Shown here: positions 45,861 through 53,900 of the stretch, one piece after another
How the letters are laid out: every line of letters begins with the position of its first letter
Position numbering within the stretch: the stretch's first letter is position 1
Assembly (NCBI RefSeq): GCF_963506605.1
Contig: NC_083279.1
Location: 19,902,001 to 19,966,000, forward strand
DNA length: 64,000 nucleotides
Direction of reading: 5' to 3'
DNA from: Zootoca vivipara
Lineage: Eukaryota
Notes under the pieces: model-generated
What the model saw: the letters and a program-made list of their open reading frames with translations, nothing else
Told to the model about the DNA's origin: nothing
The model's database searches: none
Made by a program: the position numbers and the translations under genes

Positions 45861-45995
45861 CATGGTTTCCCAAATTTGGGTCTCCACCGGCTTTTGGACT
45901 ACAACTCCCATCATCCCTAGCTAGCAAGACCAATGGTCAGGGATGATGGGAATTGTAGTCCGAAAGCAGCTGGAGAACCAAGTTTGGGAACCAGG
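45861..45995. mobile_element. palindromic hAT MITE
   Basis: GACTACAACTCCCATCATCCCT ... AGGGATGATGGGAATTGTAGTC; relatives at 1531, 38177, 50810 and 60710. Confidence 0.75.
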
Positions 45996-46640
45996 GCAAT
46001 GTCTCCCACTAGTTCTGAGGCCGCTCCAAACCCTTGTTTTGGTTTTTGCCTCCAACAGGCAGCAAAACCAAAAGGCCCGCGCACACACAAACCTGCACTC
46101 TCGTGAAGTCAAGCTCCGGTTAGCAAGCCGAGGAGCCAAGCAGTCTCTCCAACTCCGGAGCAAGATTAAGAACTAACGGGACGAAGCTGAGCTCGAGGAA
46201 TCAGTAGGTCTTGCTTTCTGAGCAGACGCGATCAAGATGGCGCTGCAAGCCCTTGCCAGGGTTTAACTGGCCTCATTAAAGTGCCCGAGATGCGATTCCA
46301 CCTTTCCTTCTTTTTTTCTCTCACACACGCATGAGGAAACACCATGTTTTTTGTATGTTGCTTCTTAAAAAAAATGTTTTCATTGAAAGATTTTCATTAT
46401 GGATAACAAAGGTGCATATGACTCTTGTTTTCAATTCATAGTGTCTTTTCTACATTGGTGGTGGTTGGGAGAGAGAAGTAGAGAGTGGGGGGGAGAGAGA
46501 GAATGATATCTCATTCTTTTGCTTAGTGTATGCATAGTTTTTGCATCAGCATCACATGGATGTGTTATTTTTGTTTGCAGTGGTTTGTAAGTTTCTTTGA
46601 GTTCTTTTTTTAATAACAATAATAATAATCAAGGCATTGA

Positions 46641-46769
46641 TCCCTTCATGGATCAATGCCTTGTCGTGGCGAAGGGGCTTGAATAACTCAGAGAAGCTAT
46701 GAGCTATGCCATGCAGGGCCACCCAAGATGGACAGGTCATAGTGGAGAGTTTTGACTAAACGTGATCCA
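46641..46769 (+). ncRNA. candidate HDV/CPEB3-like self-cleaving ribozyme in the BovB 5' UTR
   Basis: P1 TCCCTTC/GAAGGGG, P2 TGGATCA/TGATCCA, P3 GCC/GGC, L3 TTGTCGT, P1.1 G-C, a long P4, and J4/2 starting at C46756. Pairings read by eye. Confidence 0.55.
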
Positions 46770-46820
46770 CCTGGAGAAGGAACTGGCAAGCCACTCCAGT
46801 ATCCCTGCCAAGAAAACTCC

Positions 46821-49800
46821 ATGGACAAAGACAACAGGCATATAAAAGTTATGACGCTGGAAGATGAGCCCCTCAGGTCGGAAGGCGTCCAACATGCTAC
46901 TGAGGAAGAGCGGAGGACAAGTACAAGTAGATTCAGAGCTGATGAAGCGGCTGGGCCAAAGCCGAAAGGACGCTCAGTTGCGGATATGCCTGGAAGCGAA
47001 AGGAAAGTCCGATGCTGTAAAGAAAAATATTGCATAGGAACCTGGAATGTAAGAACCATGAATAGAGGTAAGCTGGATGTGGTCAAAAATGAGATGACAA
47101 GAATAAATATCGACATCCTGGGCATCAGTGAACTAAAATGGAAGGGAATGGGTGAATTCAGTTCGGGTGACTATCATATCTACTACTGTGGGCAAGAATC
47201 CTGTAGAAGAAATGGAGTGGCCCTCATAGTCAACAAAAGAGTGGCAAAAGCTGTGATGGGATGCAATCTCAAAAATGACAGAATGATCTCGATACGAATC
47301 CAAGGCAGACCTTTTAACATCACAGTAATCCAAGTTTATGCACCAACTACCGGTGCTGAAGAAAGTGAAATTGACCAATTCTATGAAGACCTACAACACC
47401 TTCTAGAAATGGCACCAAAGAAGGATGTTCTTCTCATTACAGGGGATTGGAATGCTAAAGTAGGGAATCAAGAGATAAAAGGAACAACTGGCAAGTTTGG
47501 CCTTGGAGTTCAAAATGAAGCAGGGCAAAGGCTAATAGAGTTCTGTCAAGAGAACAAGCTGGTCATCACAAACACTCTCTTCCAACAACACAAGAGACGA
47601 CTCTACACATGGATATCACCAAATGGGCAGCATCGAAATCAGATTGATTATATTCTCTGCAGCCAAAGATGGAGAAGCTCTATACAGTCAGCAAAAACAA
47701 GACCTGGAGCTGACTGTAACTCAGATCATCAGCTTCTTATAGCAAAATTCCAGCTTAAAATGAAGAAAGTAGGAAAAACCACTGGGCCAGTAAGATACAA
47801 TCTGAATCAAATCCCTTATGAATACACAGTGGAAGTGAGGAACAGGTTTAAGGATTTAGATTTGGTGGACAGAGTGCCTGAAGAACTATGGATGGAGGCT
47901 CGTAACATTATACAGGAGGCAGCAACAAAAACCATCCCAAGGAAAAGGAAATGCAAGAAAGCAAAATGGCTGTCCAACGAGGCCTTACAAATAGCGGAGG
48001 AGAGGAGGCAAGCAAAATGCAAGGGAGATAGGGAAAGATACAGGAAACTGAATGCAGATTTCCAAAAAACAGCAAGGAGAGACAAGAGGGTCTTCTTAAA
48101 TGAGCAATGCAAAGAAATAGAGGAAAACAATAGAATGGGGAAAACCAGAGATCTGTTCAAGAAAATTGGAGATATGAAAGGAACATTTCGTACAAAGATT
48201 ACCATAATCAAGGACAAAAGTGGTAAGGACCTAACAGAAGCAGAAGACATCAAGAAGAGGTGGCAAGAATACACAGAGGAATTATACCAGAAAGATATGG
48301 AGGTCTCGTACACCCCAGGTAGTGTGGTTGCTGACCTTGAGCCAGACATCTTGGAGAGTGAAGTCAAATGGGCCTTAGAAAGCACTGCTAATAACAAGGC
48401 CAGTGGAAGTGATGATATTCCAGCTGAACTATTTAAAATTTTAAAAGATGATGCTGTTAAGGTGCTACACCCAATATGCCAGCAAGTTTGGAAAACTCAG
48501 CAATGGCCAGAGGATTGGAGAAGATCAGTCTACATCCCAATTCCAAAAAAGGGCAGTGCCAAAGAATGCTCCAACTACCGCACAATTGCCCTCATTTCAC
48601 ACGCTAGCAAGGTTATGCTTAAAATTCTACAAGGCAGGCTTAGGCAGTATGTGGACCGAGAACTCCCAGAAGTGCAAGCTGGATTTCGAAAGGGCAGAGG
48701 AACCAGAGACCAAATAGCAAACATGCGCTGGATTATGGAGAAAGCTAGAGAGTTCCAGAAAAACGTCTACTTCTGCTTCATTGACTATGCAAAAGCCTTT
48801 GACTGTGTCGACCACAGCAAACTATGGCAAGTTCTTAAAGAAATGGGAGTGCCTGATCACCTCATCTGTCTCCTGAGAAATCTCTATGTGGGACAAGAAG
48901 CTACAGTTAGAACTGGATATGGAACAACCGATTGGTTCAAAATTGGGAAAGGAGTACGACAAGGTTGTATATTGTCTCCCTGCTTATTTAACTTATATGC
49001 AGAATTCATCATGCGAAAGGCTGGACTAGATGAATCCCAAGCAGGAATTAAGATTGCCGGAAGAAATATCAACAACCTCAGATATGCAGATGACACAACC
49101 TTGATGGCAGAAAGTGAGGAGGAATTAAAGAACCTTTTAATGAGGGTGAAAGAGGAGAGCGCAAAATATGGTCTGAAGCTCAACATCAAAAAAACCAAGA
49201 TCATGGCCACTGGTCCCATCACCTCCTGGCAAATAGAAGGGGAAGAAATGGAGGCAGTGAGAGATTTTACTTTCTTGGGCTCCTTGATCACTGCAGATGG
49301 TGACAGCAGTCACGAAATTAAAAGACGCCTGCTTCTTGGGAGAAAAGCAATGACAAACCTAGACAGCATCTTAAAAAGCAGAGACATCACCTTGCCGACA
49401 AAGGTCCGTATAGTTAAAGCTATGGTTTTCCCAGTAGTGATGTATGGAAGTGAGAGCTGGACCATAAAGAAGGCTGATCGCCGAAGAATTGATGCTTTTG
49501 AATTATGGTGCTGGAGGAGACTCTTGAGAGTCCCATGGACTGCTAGAAGATCAAACCTATCCATTCTTAAGGAAATCAGCCCTGAGTGCTCCCTGGAAGG
49601 ACAGATCGTGAAGCTGAGGCTCCAATACTTTGGCCACCTCATGAGAAGAGAAGAATCCTTGGAAAAGACCCTGATGTTGGGAAAGATTGAGGGCACTAGG
49701 AGAAGGGGACGACAGAGGACGAGATGGTTGGACAGTGTTCTCGAGGCTACGGACATGAGTTTGACCGAACTGCGGGAGGCAGTGGAAGACAGGAGTGCCT

Positions 49801-49853
49801 GGCGTGCTATGGTCCATGGGGTCACGAAGAGTCGGACACGACTAAACGACTAA
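46821..49853 (+). CDS. BovB ORF: APE endonuclease + reverse transcriptase
   Basis: Uninterrupted frame, open from 46752 with first ATG at 46821. EN motifs GTWNVRTM, LGISELKW, GDWNA, IDYIL, SDH; RT motifs QAGFRKGR, FIDYAKAFD, GVRQGCILSP, YADD. Confidence 0.95.
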   Translation: MDKDNRHIKVMTLEDEPLRSEGVQHATEEERRTSTSRFRADEAAGPKPKGRSVADMPGSERKVRCCKEKYCIGTWNVRTMNRGKLDVVKNEMTRINIDILGISELKWKGMGEFSSGDYHIYYCGQESCRRNGVALIVNKRVAKAVMGCNLKNDRMISIRIQGRPFNITVIQVYAPTTGAEESEIDQFYEDLQHLLEMAPKKDVLLITGDWNAKVGNQEIKGTTGKFGLGVQNEAGQRLIEFCQENKLVITNTLFQQHKRRLYTWISPNGQHRNQIDYILCSQRWRSSIQSAKTRPGADCNSDHQLLIAKFQLKMKKVGKTTGPVRYNLNQIPYEYTVEVRNRFKDLDLVDRVPEELWMEARNIIQEAATKTIPRKRKCKKAKWLSNEALQIAEERRQAKCKGDRERYRKLNADFQKTARRDKRVFLNEQCKEIEENNRMGKTRDLFKKIGDMKGTFRTKITIIKDKSGKDLTEAEDIKKRWQEYTEELYQKDMEVSYTPGSVVADLEPDILESEVKWALESTANNKASGSDDIPAELFKILKDDAVKVLHPICQQVWKTQQWPEDWRRSVYIPIPKKGSAKECSNYRTIALISHASKVMLKILQGRLRQYVDRELPEVQAGFRKGRGTRDQIANMRWIMEKAREFQKNVYFCFIDYAKAFDCVDHSKLWQVLKEMGVPDHLICLLRNLYVGQEATVRTGYGTTDWFKIGKGVRQGCILSPCLFNLYAEFIMRKAGLDESQAGIKIAGRNINNLRYADDTTLMAESEEELKNLLMRVKEESAKYGLKLNIKKTKIMATGPITSWQIEGEEMEAVRDFTFLGSLITADGDSSHEIKRRLLLGRKAMTNLDSILKSRDITLPTKVRIVKAMVFPVVMYGSESWTIKKADRRRIDAFELWCWRRLLRVPWTARRSNLSILKEISPECSLEGQIVKLRLQYFGHLMRREESLEKTLMLGKIEGTRRRGRQRTRWLDSVLEATDMSLTELREAVEDRSAWRAMVHGVTKSRTRLND

Positions 49854-50559
49854 ACAACAATAATACTTTGTTCATAGTACCAATCTTATAGACCTACAAT
49901 TCCCAGCACCTTTAGTAAATGAACAATCATGGAGACTCTTGGGCATTGAAAAGTGGTAAAAGAGCAAATTGTAGATCTGAAAGGGACCCCAGGGGTCATC
50001 CAGTCCAACCCCCTGCAATGCATGAATCTCAGCTAAAGTATCCTTGTGCTTCAAATGTTTGATGTGGATGTGACCTGAGATAAGATTGCAGAAAAGTAAC
50101 AAAAACAGCATTTAAAACAGCAGCAGCAACTATTTCAACTGATAAAAAAATAACACAGCAGATTAAACAGGTATTAAATCATCCAGAAACCAACTGGGCT
50201 GGAGGTGTCTGGAGTTCCTTCAGAAATGCAGGGCCCCTGCAGAAAAGGCCCTGTCCCTGATAGTCACTGGCTCTCGGTGTTGGACCAGAGGGCAAGGCAT
50301 CTGGTTCTGGGGCAATCACACATTAATGCAGGCAGTCCTTCAGATTGCCTGGTCCCAAATCTTAGGGTTTTGATTGTTAACATCATCACCTTAAATTAGT
50401 TTTACAGCACTTCGGGGGTTATATATATATATGAGAGGTTTGGTATCAAAACCCAGGCCCATGAATGAAAAGGGCCTTGGAGTCCAGGATTCTGTTAATA
50501 TGGAAATAAGATGATGTCTGGTGAAATATGGTTTGGATGTCACTGTGCCACAAAAACAC

Positions 50560-50798: not shown

Positions 50799-50809
50799 CT
50801 AAGATAGGT

Positions 50810-50940
50810 CAGCCTTCGCCAACCTAGCACCCTCCATATGTTTTGGACTGTAACTCCCAACAGTCCCTCCTCCCCACCAGTATGTGCTGATGGGAGGTGT
50901 AGTCCAAAACATGTGGAGGGCACCAGGTTGGCAAAGGCTG
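50810..50940. mobile_element. palindromic hAT MITE
   Basis: TIR CAGCCTT(C/T)GCCAACCT and TSD AGATAGGT/ATATAGGT. Confidence 0.8.
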
Positions 50941-53900
50941 ATATAGGTGATCCGCTTTGCAGCCTTTCTCAGCTTCCCCCTCATTGCAGACTGCGAGGTT
51001 AGGCACCCCCCAGGGAACAGGAAATGAAAATGGATTTTTTTCCTCCTCTCCCCTCCTTGTCTTCCTTTCTCTTCTTCATTATTCTCAATTGTACCCTGGA
51101 GATACTGATTGTGGTATTCTCCTAATCCCTTGCCTGGTGGGGTTATTTCCTCCCCCTCCCCCGCAAAAAAACAAAACACCACATCATGTCTTCATTGTTT
51201 TTTGGAGAACTTAATGACAACGGGGGCATCCCTCGTTTAACTGCGGGAGCAAAATGCGGGAGCAAAATGGCATATGAGCAATGATGGAATTTTTGCAAGG
51301 GAGGGCGGTGGACGACTGTCCTGGGACATTCCTTTTTCACTTCAACAGCGAGCAATGGGTGCATTTCTAGGGGGCAGGAAGGCGTGAAACCCTGCTATGG
51401 AAGGAACCCGCATATGGAAGGAATGCTCTTCCCAAAAGGCTAAACATGGGACAGGGACCGTGGAGTTAAAATATAGTCTTTTATGTGGAATGGTTAGAAT
51501 TTCTGGTTGCGGAGAAGGTTTCTAAAACCTGCATTCCCTACCAGGTTTTGGTTTTGGTTTGCAAAAAAATATAATGGGATATTAAAAAAAAGAACTCCAG
51601 AGAATCATTAAAGGCGAAGAAAGCGGAGGTTCTAGCCAAATTTATGTTGTCTCTGATTTCGCACATAAGGTGCACTGAAGGTGCTGAGAACTTTACTGTC
51701 CTGTTGAAATTAACAGGAACGGAACGTGCATAAATTCGGCTGAATCGCGCCCTCAACCTTCCGAGTGTATTTGGCTGGAGTTGTGCGTTGTTCATACTTT
51801 TCAGGTTTTCTTTACTATGCCCCCCAACTTCCTTTTCAGCCGCTTCCGATTTTTCCCCGCACAGAAAGAAGGTTTCAAAGACTTTAGTTTGTCTGTTTTA
51901 AATAGCTTGCCCCCCCTCCCTTTTCAATTCTACTTATTGCTACGAATCCAATTGGTGAAACAAAACAGATTATAGGATTAAGCAGCAGGATTTATCATTA
52001 AAATGCAAATAAATAAATAAATAACGGGTGACCACTAATGAGCATGGAGAGTTCGGTTAGGAGCGAGACGCGCGCGTCTCGTTGAAACTGGGAGGGGGGG
52101 AAACCTACAGTCGCTGCTGTTTCTTTTCTTTTTCGCAAGATGCCAAAGCGGACAACGCGTTTCTCACGTCACATAGTTTGTCGAGAGAGCCGCTTTTAAA
52201 CCAATGAAAAGCTGGGTAAATTTTTAGAAGATCTGAAATGGCATGGGGGCCCCAGGGAAGCGTTGTTCCAAAAAGTTTTGCTTTCCCCAACTGCGCTTGG
52301 ACTCTCAGGTCCTATCCATTTTAATGGGAATTCTCTCTCTCTCTTCAGGGTCGTTCAGAGTAAGTTGGAAATGGGGAGAGGGGGGGCATGAGGGTTACAG
52401 CCTTTCTCTAGTAGAAGAATTCAGTAGGTTACGTTTTCCCCATCTCTTCCTCAACCTGTGCCTTGCTGTTGAGCTCCTGATCAGGCTCAGTCAGCACAGA
52501 TAATGGTCAGGAATGATGCGAGTTGTGGTCCTCAACTCCCAGAGTCCAGGAAAGCAGATGAGCCTCAGCTTCTGTTTGCATGCAGACAGTTGCATGATGC
52601 TTAAAGCGACAGAAGACCGTGCACGCACTTGTGTAGAAGCTAGTAATTGCCCTTGAAAGTAAGGATGCTTACGCAAACACGGGTATAGGAGTTTTGCACA
52701 GGGGAATATCCCGAGACTGAATTTCGGCTAATATTTTCATATTAAAAGCTGTTCAAACGTCAGTGAGGCGGGTTGTTTTGTTCTATTTTATCATATCCCC
52801 ATCCCCAACCATTTTTAGCCCAGTCCTCAGCAGAGGCCTCCTGAGCAGCTAATAAATATCAGTCATAAAACAGTTCTCCCTTTTCATAGAATCTAAATGA
52901 CACAGCACAAAAGGAAAAAGGGACTGGGAGAGAGGAGGGGGGTGGAAGCAAACTTGTCTCGGGCTCTAATTCTTAATTATAGAGTTTTCGAAACGACCAG
53001 CTTTTTAGAGGGAAACAACAAAGGGGATTGGAAAGGTCAGGGATCACAATGCATTGTGTTCGTGTTTGAAATGTTTCTAAGGTTTATTTAATAGAAAACA
53101 AACCTATTCCCCAGTTTCTTCTGTTGCTTGCTCTGGTTCCTTCCCATCACCTTAATCTCTCTCCTCTTACATCAAAGGACGTGCACACAAAATCAAGAAA
53201 GCGTGAGCTGAACTCGGCTGTCCATTTTAATAATAATAAATAATATTTTTCTTATTTATACCCCACCCATCTGGCTGGGTTTCCCCAGCCGCTCTGGGCG
53301 GCTTCAGACAAGGGCCACCAAGCCTTGCCACTCCCCACTGAGCCATCCTTCAGGATTTGAACTTTTCTGCTTTCCTCAATTTGGCAAGCCGAGGTTTGAA
53401 AAATGTGCAAGGCTTTGTCTCCCCCCCCCCATTGCAACTCACTCAAAAGAAGCCGGACAACCCAGCAGATGGCTGCGGGCAGGATTCCTGCATCGCATGG
53501 GGTTGGGCTAGATGACCCTCGTGGTCCCTTCCCACTCAGAATCCTAGGATTCTGATTTCTGGAAAACGCTTCCAACCTCAAGCTGCGATCTCCAAAGCCC
53601 CACTGTTTTTCGAGGCAGGCCCTTGCAAGTAAGTGAGTTTAAGGATGGAGCCAGATTTTAATTTCCAGTTCAGGACTCCGTTATAATTTGCAAGCCAAAA
53701 TGCCCTCCCCAGCACGCAGCCACACCATCACCCCAGGGCACCTATGCTCAGAAGCTGTGAAACAATAATAAAATAAAATAAAATAAAGCAGCAGAACTCA
53801 CACACACCGACACCGTCCTCATATTTCCACACATCTCATATAATTCTTATCAAGTCCTGTGTGTGCTCTTTAGTTTGCAAATCAATCTGAGAATTTAGGC

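What the first reader, a model, noticed from the sequence alone, without database searches (positions are those of the whole stretch)
46641..46769. HDV/CPEB3-like ribozyme fold at the 5' end of an intact vertebrate BovB LINE
Seen: the element starts TCCCTTC-A-TGGATCA-AT-GCC-TTGTCGT-GGC-GAAGGGG-CT-[76 nt]-CTAAAC-G-TGATCCA. This gives P1 46641-47/46671-77, P2 46649-55/46763-69, P3 GCC/GGC around a 7-nt loop UUGUCGU, and a one-pair P1.1 (G46663-C46678) beside a U.U mismatch. P4 is extended (AACTC/GAGTT, GCTATGA/TCATAGT, CCAT/ATGG) and the candidate catalytic base is C46756. Knowledge: this is the order and near-exact register of the nested double pseudoknot of HDV and CPEB3 ribozymes (CPEB3 L3 is UUCACGU with a single C-G P1.1 pair; here that pair is swapped to G-C). 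HDV-like ribozymes are known at the 5' ends of R2, L1Tc and invertebrate RTE elements. Inference: BovB may cut itself out of host read-through transcripts and so not need its own promoter, which could help explain its repeated horizontal transfer. I am not aware of this being described for BovB, but cannot check. Caveats: the cleavage-site pair is U.G rather than the usual G.U, and J4/2 is slightly long.
Basis: partly seen in the sequence, partly recalled or inferred. Interest (0 to 1): 0.88.

Follow-up and report, generated by a model that had tools for sequence, protein, structure and literature searches.

The report
HDV-like ribozyme fold starting lizard BovB
The first 129 bases of this intact lizard BovB jumping gene fold like the self-cutting HDV ribozyme, with the predicted cut at the element's first base, as in related invertebrate-type elements; actual cutting has not been tested.

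Summary
A strict descriptor modelled on the candidate matches only 46641 in the window (0.18-0.30 hits expected per shuffled window).

The predicted cleavage site is the family's real 5' end. DNA depth jumps about 500-fold at 46639-46659, flanks diverge before 46642/46643, and most full-length Podarcis muralis copies start CCCCTTC.

Related RTE/BovB families fetched here have HDV-like folds at the same place, just upstream of a shared 5'UTR motif. L017 and L060 get sub-threshold Rfam HDV hits. L009/L010 has a compact 78-nt fold starting at its own first base. They share L3 U1/G6, an ..AAC junction and a C-N-A-A catalytic strand. Ruminant-type BovB keeps P2 and P4 with compensatory changes but lacks P3'/P1'.

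Against it: no Rfam HDV/CPEB3 hit, a long J1.1/4 and J4/2, a one-pair P1.1, no pile-up of RNA read starts, and many read-through reads.

The 14-bp hairpin (46630-46663) belongs to this copy only and is best read as a snap-back extension that would hinder its own cleavage.

Verdict: a new member of a known kind, probably functional, cleavage untested. The scan already reported the same fold on other pieces of this genome (s1-848603, s1-853490, s1-851730).

The parts
46630..46640 (+). 11-nt extension found only in this copy. It is the exact reverse complement of 46653-46663. With 46641-46643 it forms the left arm of a perfect 14-bp hairpin (46630-43/46650-63).
   Evidence: hairpin -22.6 kcal/mol. 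DNA depth is about 1.7k here against 840k-1.8M inside the element, and flanks diverge before 46642/46643.
46641..46647 (+). P1 5' strand UCCCUUC, with the predicted cleavage 5' of its first base. The family form is CCCCUUC.
   Evidence: Family start.
46649..46655 (+). P2 5' strand UGGAUCA. In P. muralis and ruminant-type copies, where 46656 is C, it extends to an 8th pair with G46762.
46658..46670 (+). P3 (GCC/GGC) enclosing the 7-nt L3 UUGUCGU. U46661 and G46666 sit at the positions of the conserved L3 U and G. G46663 pairs with C46678 as P1.1.
   Evidence: The role of the L3 G is from PMC3774820.
46671..46678 (+). P1 3' strand GAAGGGG followed by C46678, the P1.1 partner.
   Evidence: This stretch is absent from ruminant-type BovB.
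46679..46751 (+). J1.1/4 (UUGAAU, ending in the shared ..AAC) and a long P4 domain: AACUC/GAGUU, GCUAUGA/UCAUAGU, and a distal CCAU/AUGG.
   Evidence: The UCAUAG/CUAUG stem has a U-A to C-G compensatory change in ruminant-type copies. The distal part is not conserved in the major P. muralis subfamily.
46752..46762 (+). J4/2 UUGACUAAACG with the candidate catalytic C46756 in a C-U-A-A motif.
   Evidence: GACUAA here, GCCAA in L010, GGCUAA in L017 and L060. Among about 95 P. muralis copies, 86 read GACCAAACG, 2 read GACTAAACG and none read GATC.
46763..46769 (+). P2 3' strand UGAUCCA.
   Evidence: Pair 46653-46765 is U-A here and C-G in ruminant-type copies.
46771..46830 (+). Conserved RTE/BovB 5'UTR motif (GGAGAAGGAACUGGCAAGCCACUCCAG...UGCCAAGAAAAC) lying between the ribozyme fold and the ATG.
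   Evidence: blastn and motif listing.
46821..49853 (+). Intact BovB ORF of 1010 aa with APE-type endonuclease and reverse transcriptase domains.
49854..49865 (+). Very short 3' tail (..aacaacaataata) running into an AT-rich target-site repeat.
   Evidence: compared with the P. muralis copy ends.

Best explanation
The first 129 nt of lacertid BovB are an HDV-like self-cleaving ribozyme inherited from the RTE-clade ancestor. Proposed mechanism: a copy transcribed as part of a longer host transcript folds into the nested double pseudoknot (P1-P1.1-P4 stacked beside P2-P3). C46756 in J4/2, with a Mg2+ ion held near L3 (U46661, G46666), cuts the backbone just 5' of P1. This frees an RNA whose first base is the first base of the element. 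That RNA is translated and reverse-transcribed, so new full-length copies all begin CCCCTTC. What is shown: the fold, its homologues in relatives and the exact 5' boundary. What is inferred: catalysis and its role in the life cycle. In this copy the cDNA end appears to have snapped back on itself and added 11-12 nt. The resulting 14-bp hairpin would compete with P1, P2 and P3 in a read-through transcript.
For: (1) All helices are present, and the strict descriptor hits only 46641 in 128 kb against 0.18-0.30 expected. (2) The predicted cut is the family's 5' end. Depth rises from 1.7k to 840k to 1.8M across 46618-46680, and 53+23 DNA contigs and 82+15 RNA reads have heterogeneous flanks ending before 46642/46643. 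About 90 of roughly 100 listed P. muralis copies longer than 3 kb start at the same base, and TSDs abut CCCCTTC. (3) Relatives have the fold at the same place. L017/L022 and L060 have 30-32-bit hits to Rfam HDV_ribozyme and HDV-F-prausnitzii in the 5'UTR, just upstream of the same GGCAAUGGCAAACC motif. L010:643-720 is a compact 78-nt HDV fold, and L009/L010 homology begins at its P1 base 1. (4) All 15 core pairs are kept in the four families, 14 with changes on both sides. Motifs that were not part of the descriptor are shared: J1.1/4 ..AAC and J4/2 C-[UC]-A-A. (5) P2 and P4 each show a U-A to C-G compensatory change between lizard and ruminant-type BovB. (6) The odd features have active precedents. 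L1Tc cleaves at C1 and has a one-pair P1.1 (PMC3185411). The fast C. briggsae ribozyme has a U:A plus C:U P1.1 (PMC13635239). (7) P1+P3+P4 alone is -32.8 kcal/mol against a nested MFE of -36.5, so the fold is competitive once P2 is added.
Against: No Rfam HDV-family or CPEB3 model scores the segment, even at E<=10 on 166 nt. However, Rfam also misses the compact L010 fold. J1.1/4 (about 6 nt) and J4/2 (11 nt, with 5-6 nt after the C) are longer than usual, and G-A-C replaces G-G-C. The MFE z-score of the whole segment is only -0.38. RNA reads show no concentration of starts at 46641, and about half of the laid RNA runs on into unlike flanking sequence, meaning uncleaved read-through. The cross-family pair table was fitted to the structure, so its paired fraction is biased upward. 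Squamate BovB families outside Lacertidae could not be fetched. A precise 5' end is equally what an internal promoter would give.
Confidence: 0.6

Rival explanations
1. Relic ribozyme or structured 5'UTR. The fold descends from an RTE ribozyme but no longer cuts. The 5' end is set by an internal promoter that starts transcription at base 1. The conserved P2-P4 domain serves translation initiation or binding of the element's own protein.
For: Ruminant-type BovB keeps P2 and P4 with compensatory changes although P3' and P1' are deleted, so that domain is maintained without a ribozyme core. The junctions are longer than usual and there is no Rfam hit. RNA reads show no pile-up of starts and abundant read-through. 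L1Tc shows that promoter and ribozyme can share the same 77 nt and the same +1 (PMC3185411).
Against: Within lacertids P1, P3, L3 U1/G6, P1.1 and C46756 are all intact. The differences between the two P. muralis subfamilies fall mainly in P4 and the junctions. A dead relic in a family with thousands of young copies would be expected to have lost some core feature.
Confidence: 0.27
2. Chance complementarity in a GC-balanced 5'UTR, with no ribozyme ancestry.
For: A loose descriptor gives dozens of hits per window (45 and 63 per strand) and about 12 per 332 kb on the antisense strands of the loci. The whole-segment MFE is not unusual.
Against: The strict form is unique in the window and starts within 1 nt of an independently measured family boundary. 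Three related families have the fold at the homologous position, with shared unpaired motifs.
Confidence: 0.05
3. The dominant structure is the 14-bp hairpin 46630-46663, for example a promoter or terminal-repeat element of BovB, and the HDV reading is secondary.
For: It is a perfect 14-bp stem of -22.6 kcal/mol, and it dominates the fold of 46600-46800 (z = -2.56).
Against: Its left arm lies outside the family. Depth there is about 500-fold lower, other copies have unrelated flanks, and P. muralis copies lack it.
Confidence: 0.03

Closest known systems
[quoted passage not shown] 2011, cited in PMC6765202 and PMC5786205; examples fetched here: L017/L022, L060, L009/L010)
   Same: Same clade of element. 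The ribozyme is the first thing in the element, just upstream of the same conserved 5'UTR motif. The helix order is the same, as are L3 U1/G6, the ..AAC junction and the C-N-A-A catalytic strand.
   Different: The host is a vertebrate. P4 is much longer (about 67 nt against 12-20), and J1.1/4 and J4/2 are longer. P1.1 is a single G-C pair. The +1 base is C, which L009/L010 shares but L017 and L060 (G) do not. It is not detected by Rfam models. I could not read Ruminski et al. 2011, so I cannot exclude that a BovB was listed there.
L1Tc ribozyme of Trypanosoma cruzi (PMC3185411)
   Same: An HDV-like ribozyme occupying the first bases of a LINE. It cleaves at C1 of a GC-rich P1, has a one-pair P1.1, and is inhibited by upstream sequence that forms alternative helices.
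   Different: It belongs to the Ingi clade rather than RTE, is 77 nt long, and has been shown to be active and to overlap a promoter. None of that is shown here.
Mammalian CPEB3 ribozyme
   Same: I did not check this against a CPEB3 sequence.
   Different: CPEB3 is an intronic single-copy ribozyme with G1.U at the cut. The Rfam CPEB3 model does not match this segment. The L3 pattern is also present in the L009/L010 RTE family, which is the more likely relative.
R2 element ribozymes (PMC3774820)
   Same: They free a LINE RNA from a co-transcript. P4 and the junctions are variable, and only the catalytic C and a few other bases are fixed.
   Different: R2 is site-specific in rDNA and often cleaves upstream in 28S. 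BovB inserts throughout the genome.

Membership tests
HDV-like self-cleaving ribozymes | Nested double pseudoknot in the order P1-P2-P3-L3-P3'-P1'-P1.1-P4-J4/2-P2' | tested here: met
   P1 7 bp, P2 7 bp, P3 3 bp, no P3'/P1' linker.
HDV-like self-cleaving ribozymes | Cytosine in J4/2 followed by N-A-A (the general acid) | tested here: met
   C46756-U-A-A. C-[UC]-A-A is present in all four families. The C is kept in 88 of about 95 P. muralis copies counted. Its catalytic role was not tested.
HDV-like self-cleaving ribozymes | 7-nt L3 with the conserved U and G that form the reverse wobble | tested here: met
   UUGUCGU has U at position 1 and G at position 6. The importance of the G is stated in PMC3774820.
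HDV-like self-cleaving ribozymes | P1.1 pairing between L3 and the bases after P1' | tested here: met
   One Watson-Crick pair, G46663-C46678, beside a U.U mismatch. The pair covaries: U-A in L010, C-G in L017 and L060. One-pair P1.1 is known in active L1Tc.
HDV-like self-cleaving ribozymes | G.U wobble at the cleavage-site pair | tested here: not met
   U.G in this copy and C-G in the family. This feature is not universal: L1Tc cleaves at C1 and L017 has G-C.
HDV-like self-cleaving ribozymes | Score above threshold with Rfam HDV-family covariance models | tested here: not met
   No hit at E<=10 on 166 nt or on 6 kb. The models also miss the compact L010 fold, and score L017 and L060 below gathering.
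HDV-like self-cleaving ribozymes | Helices supported by covariation in relatives | tested here: inconclusive
   14 of 15 core pairs change on both sides across four families, but the alignment was fitted to the structure. Two independent compensatory changes, in P2 and P4, appear in a sequence-based alignment with ruminant-type BovB. No other squamate families were available.
HDV-like self-cleaving ribozymes | [quoted passage not shown] | not testable with these tools
   RNA reads give no pile-up of starts at 46641 and many read-through reads. A standard library cannot settle this.
CPEB3 ribozyme (Rfam RF00622) | Match to the family model | tested here: not met
   No match. The locus is a LINE 5' end.
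BovB / RTE-clade LINE | Single ORF with an APE-type endonuclease and a reverse transcriptase, closest to BovB proteins | tested here: met
   PF03372, PF14529 and PF00078. 94% identity to a P. muralis protein and 76-81% to bovid proteins.

The most novel reading that the evidence does not exclude
Squamate BovB is processed by an active HDV-like ribozyme of a distinct C1 / UUNNCGU-L3 / one-pair-P1.1 subtype that it shares with the L009/L010 family. This would make BovB independent of a promoter in any host, able to use read-through transcription from whatever site it lands in. The ruminant lineage would then have lost the ribozyme core and replaced it with a longer acquired 5' region.
Probability: 0.4. 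Interest if true: 0.75.

Novelty: new member of a known kind. Interest (0 to 1): 0.62.

Why it matters
BovB is the textbook case of a LINE that moved horizontally among squamates, ruminants and other animals. A 2026 study of reptilian Bov-B states that why RTE-clade LINEs transfer more often than L1 is poorly understood (PMC13295347). A self-cleaving 5' end would let a newly arrived copy make a correct full-length RNA from any host read-through transcript, which gives a concrete and testable contribution to that success. It would also add a very abundant vertebrate HDV-like ribozyme and define a subtype that current Rfam models miss. The ruminant relic would show how such a ribozyme is lost. 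In the literature I could search, no paper links BovB to a ribozyme. HDV-like ribozymes in RTE elements in general are already known.

Tried and rejected
- The viral-contig scan gave only one unrelated 23% hit.
- A covariance model built from L009/L010 alone (R1) did not find the window candidate. With effectively one training sequence this says little.
- Rfam scans of 36 loci found HDV-type hits only in L017, L022 and L060.
- L065, L069, L023 and L025 contain GACUAAA-like strings, but I could not fold them into an HDV architecture.
- I first thought the element began at 46630 and that the 14-bp hairpin argued against the ribozyme. Read depth and loose ends showed the left arm is private to this copy, so I dropped that reading.
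- Ruminski et al. 2011, Webb et al. 2009 and Cerrone-Szakal et al. 2008 are not held.

Full report
**What is in the sequence**

My descriptor script recovers these helices:
- P1 UCCCUUC/GAAGGGG
- P2 UGGAUCA/UGAUCCA
- P3 GCC/GGC around L3 UUGUCGU
- a one-pair P1.1, G46663-C46678, beside a U.U mismatch
- a long P4 domain
- J4/2 UUGACUAAACG holding C46756

P1+P3+P4 together evaluate to -32.8 kcal/mol against a pseudoknot-free MFE of -36.5. With the seven P2 pairs added, the double pseudoknot is therefore competitive. The plain MFE of the segment is unremarkable, z = -0.38.

The element is an intact BovB. Its 1010-aa ORF at 46821-49853 has Exo_endo_phos and RVT_1 domains. It is 94% identical to a Podarcis muralis protein and 98% identical to a partial Zootoca protein, so the genome is a lacertid lizard.

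**Is it more than chance?**

A loose HDV descriptor fires dozens of times per window. A strict one matches only 46641 on either strand. It requires 7-bp P1, 3-bp P3, a 7-nt L3 with U1 and G6, no linker, a Watson-Crick P1.1 pair, P2 of at least 5-7 bp, and a C 3-7 nt before P2'. Shuffled windows give 0.18-0.30 hits, and 20,000 local shuffles give none. The rule set was written after seeing the candidate, so the location evidence below carries more weight than these numbers.

**Where the family really starts**

I first suspected the element began at 46630. A perfect 14-bp hairpin, 46630-43/46650-63, spans the proposed cut. Laying public reads settled the matter:
- In DNA contigs of the same species, depth is about 52 upstream, 1.7k at 46618-38, 840k at 46639-59 and 1.8M at 46660-80.
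- 53+23 contigs and 82+15 RNA reads carry heterogeneous flanks that end just before 46642/46643.

The family therefore begins within a base of the predicted cleavage site.

The supplement of a 2026 paper on reptilian Bov-B gives independent support (PMC13295347). About 90 of roughly 100 listed P. muralis copies longer than 3 kb start at the same base, and target-site duplications abut CCCCTTCATGG. The paper's Figure 4 legend notes that reptilian full-length Bov-B begins with a stretch of cytosines. It does not contain the words ribozyme, promoter or UTR.

In the family, P1 is CCCCUUC/GAAGGGG, all Watson-Crick. In this copy 46630-46640 is the exact reverse complement of 46653-46663. The simplest reading is that the cDNA 3' end snapped back on the CC/GG microhomology and copied itself, adding 11-12 nt including T46641. 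It also implies that the parent RNA ended at the P1 start.

**Relatives**

Using an alignment of BovB/RTE proteins I fetched 101 loci from metagenome and contaminated genome contigs.

*L017/L022 and L060.* Rfam scans gave sub-threshold but clear HDV_ribozyme and HDV-F-prausnitzii matches on the sense strand of the 5'UTR. The families are L017/L022 (52% aa identity) and L060 (35%). Scores were 30-32 bits with E of 0.004-0.1. Both sit just upstream of the motif GGAAGGCAAUGGCAAACCAC, which is the window's 46771-46795.

*L009/L010.* This family is 59% identical in protein, and its 5'UTR aligns to 46771-46892 at 77%. It has a compact 78-nt HDV fold at L010:643-720:
- P1 CUCUCAU/AUGAGAG
- P2 ACGUGCA/UGCGCGU
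- P3 ACC/GGU
- L3 UUUACGU
- P1.1 U-A beside U.U
- a 7-bp P4
- J4/2 GCCAA

The two copies become alignable exactly at P1 base 1. Rfam does not see this fold either, so the lack of an Rfam hit on the window is weak evidence.

*Comparison across the four families.* All 15 core pairs are kept, 14 with changes on both sides. That table is structure-fitted and so biased. But three features that were not in the descriptor are shared: J1.1/4 ending ..AAC, J4/2 C-[UC]-A-A, and the L3 pattern UUNNCGU in the lizard and L010.

*Ruminant-type BovB.* Eight loci align to the lizard 5'UTR by sequence. P2 is kept, with U-A changed to C-G at 46653/46765 and two extra pairs. The UCAUAG stem of P4 shows a second U-A to C-G change. 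However, 18 nt holding P3', P1' and P1.1 (46666-46683) are missing, and the element runs at least 100 nt further 5'. The ruminant lineage therefore carries a relic, not a ribozyme.

**Do the odd features rule out activity?**

They do not on their own.
- The proven L1Tc ribozyme cleaves at C1 of a GC-rich P1 and has a single P1.1 pair (PMC3185411).
- A very fast C. briggsae ribozyme has a U:A plus C:U P1.1 (PMC13635239).
- In R2 ribozymes only the catalytic C and four other positions are fixed, and P4 and the junctions vary widely (PMC3774820).
- In about 95 P. muralis copies the C46756 equivalent is kept in at least 88, and never appears as GATC.
- The differences between the two P. muralis subfamilies fall mostly in P4 and the junctions.

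What remains unusual is the length of J1.1/4 and J4/2, and G-A-C in place of G-G-C.

**RNA evidence**

In one RNA run of the same species there is no concentration of read starts at 46641. About half of the laid RNA runs on into unlike flanking sequence, which means uncleaved co-transcripts exist. A random-primed library dominated by intronic, often decayed copies cannot decide the question. It gives no positive support for cleavage.

**Verdict**

- The 5' end of lacertid BovB very probably descends from the RTE-clade HDV-like ribozyme (about 0.85).
- I put about 0.6 on the family form still cleaving.
- The main rival is a non-cleaving structured 5'UTR with an internal promoter.
- This particular copy is the least favourable one for a test because of its private hairpin. 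The L1Tc work shows that such upstream helices inhibit cleavage.

HDV-like ribozymes in RTE elements are known (PMC6765202, PMC5786205). I found no paper connecting BovB with a ribozyme. This is a new member of a known kind.

The scan had already noted the same fold on other pieces of this genome, and one note was followed up with the same reading. Those notes are not independent evidence.

Ruminski et al. 2011 could not be read.

Noticed in passing
window 46630-46663: The perfect 14-bp palindrome arises because 11 nt upstream of the element are the exact reverse complement of 46653-46663. This looks like snap-back self-priming of the cDNA end at integration. A P. muralis copy (chr15:455177, paper supplement) instead has a direct duplication of its first ~19 nt at the 5' junction.
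   Followed up: partly
window 46771-46830; also L019:4897, L020:3615, L055:6989, L070:7045, L074-L076, L079: The motif GGAAGGCAAUGGCAAACCAC...UGCC(A/U)AG lies in the 5'UTR of some RTE/BovB families and directly after the stop codon, in the 3'UTR, of others. In ruminant-type contigs it also follows the 3' end. This fits the known origin of Bov-A units from the 5' and 3' parts of BovB. It may be a binding site for the element's protein.
   Followed up: partly
L001:3378-3460 and the same place in about 15 ruminant-type loci: My descriptor also fits an HDV-like pattern (P1 CATCACT/GGTGATG, P3 AAC/GTT, L3 TCCGGGA) inside the 3' end of the ruminant BovB ORF. The lizard sequence at the same place cannot form it. 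It is probably chance in one family.
   Followed up: no
window 45887-45970 and 50807-50943: Two long near-perfect foldbacks flank the BovB. They match plant and animal miRNA precursor models on both strands far below threshold (mir-5408, MIR7533), which is typical of MITE-like palindromic repeats.
   Followed up: no
L010:440-531: A near-perfect hairpin (sub-threshold miRNA-model hits on both strands) lies about 110 nt upstream of the L010 element start, in the flank.
   Followed up: no
window 46696-46709: GCTATGA GCTATGC is a tandem duplication inside P4 that ruminant-type BovB lacks. Either repeat can pair with UCAUAG(U).
   Followed up: no
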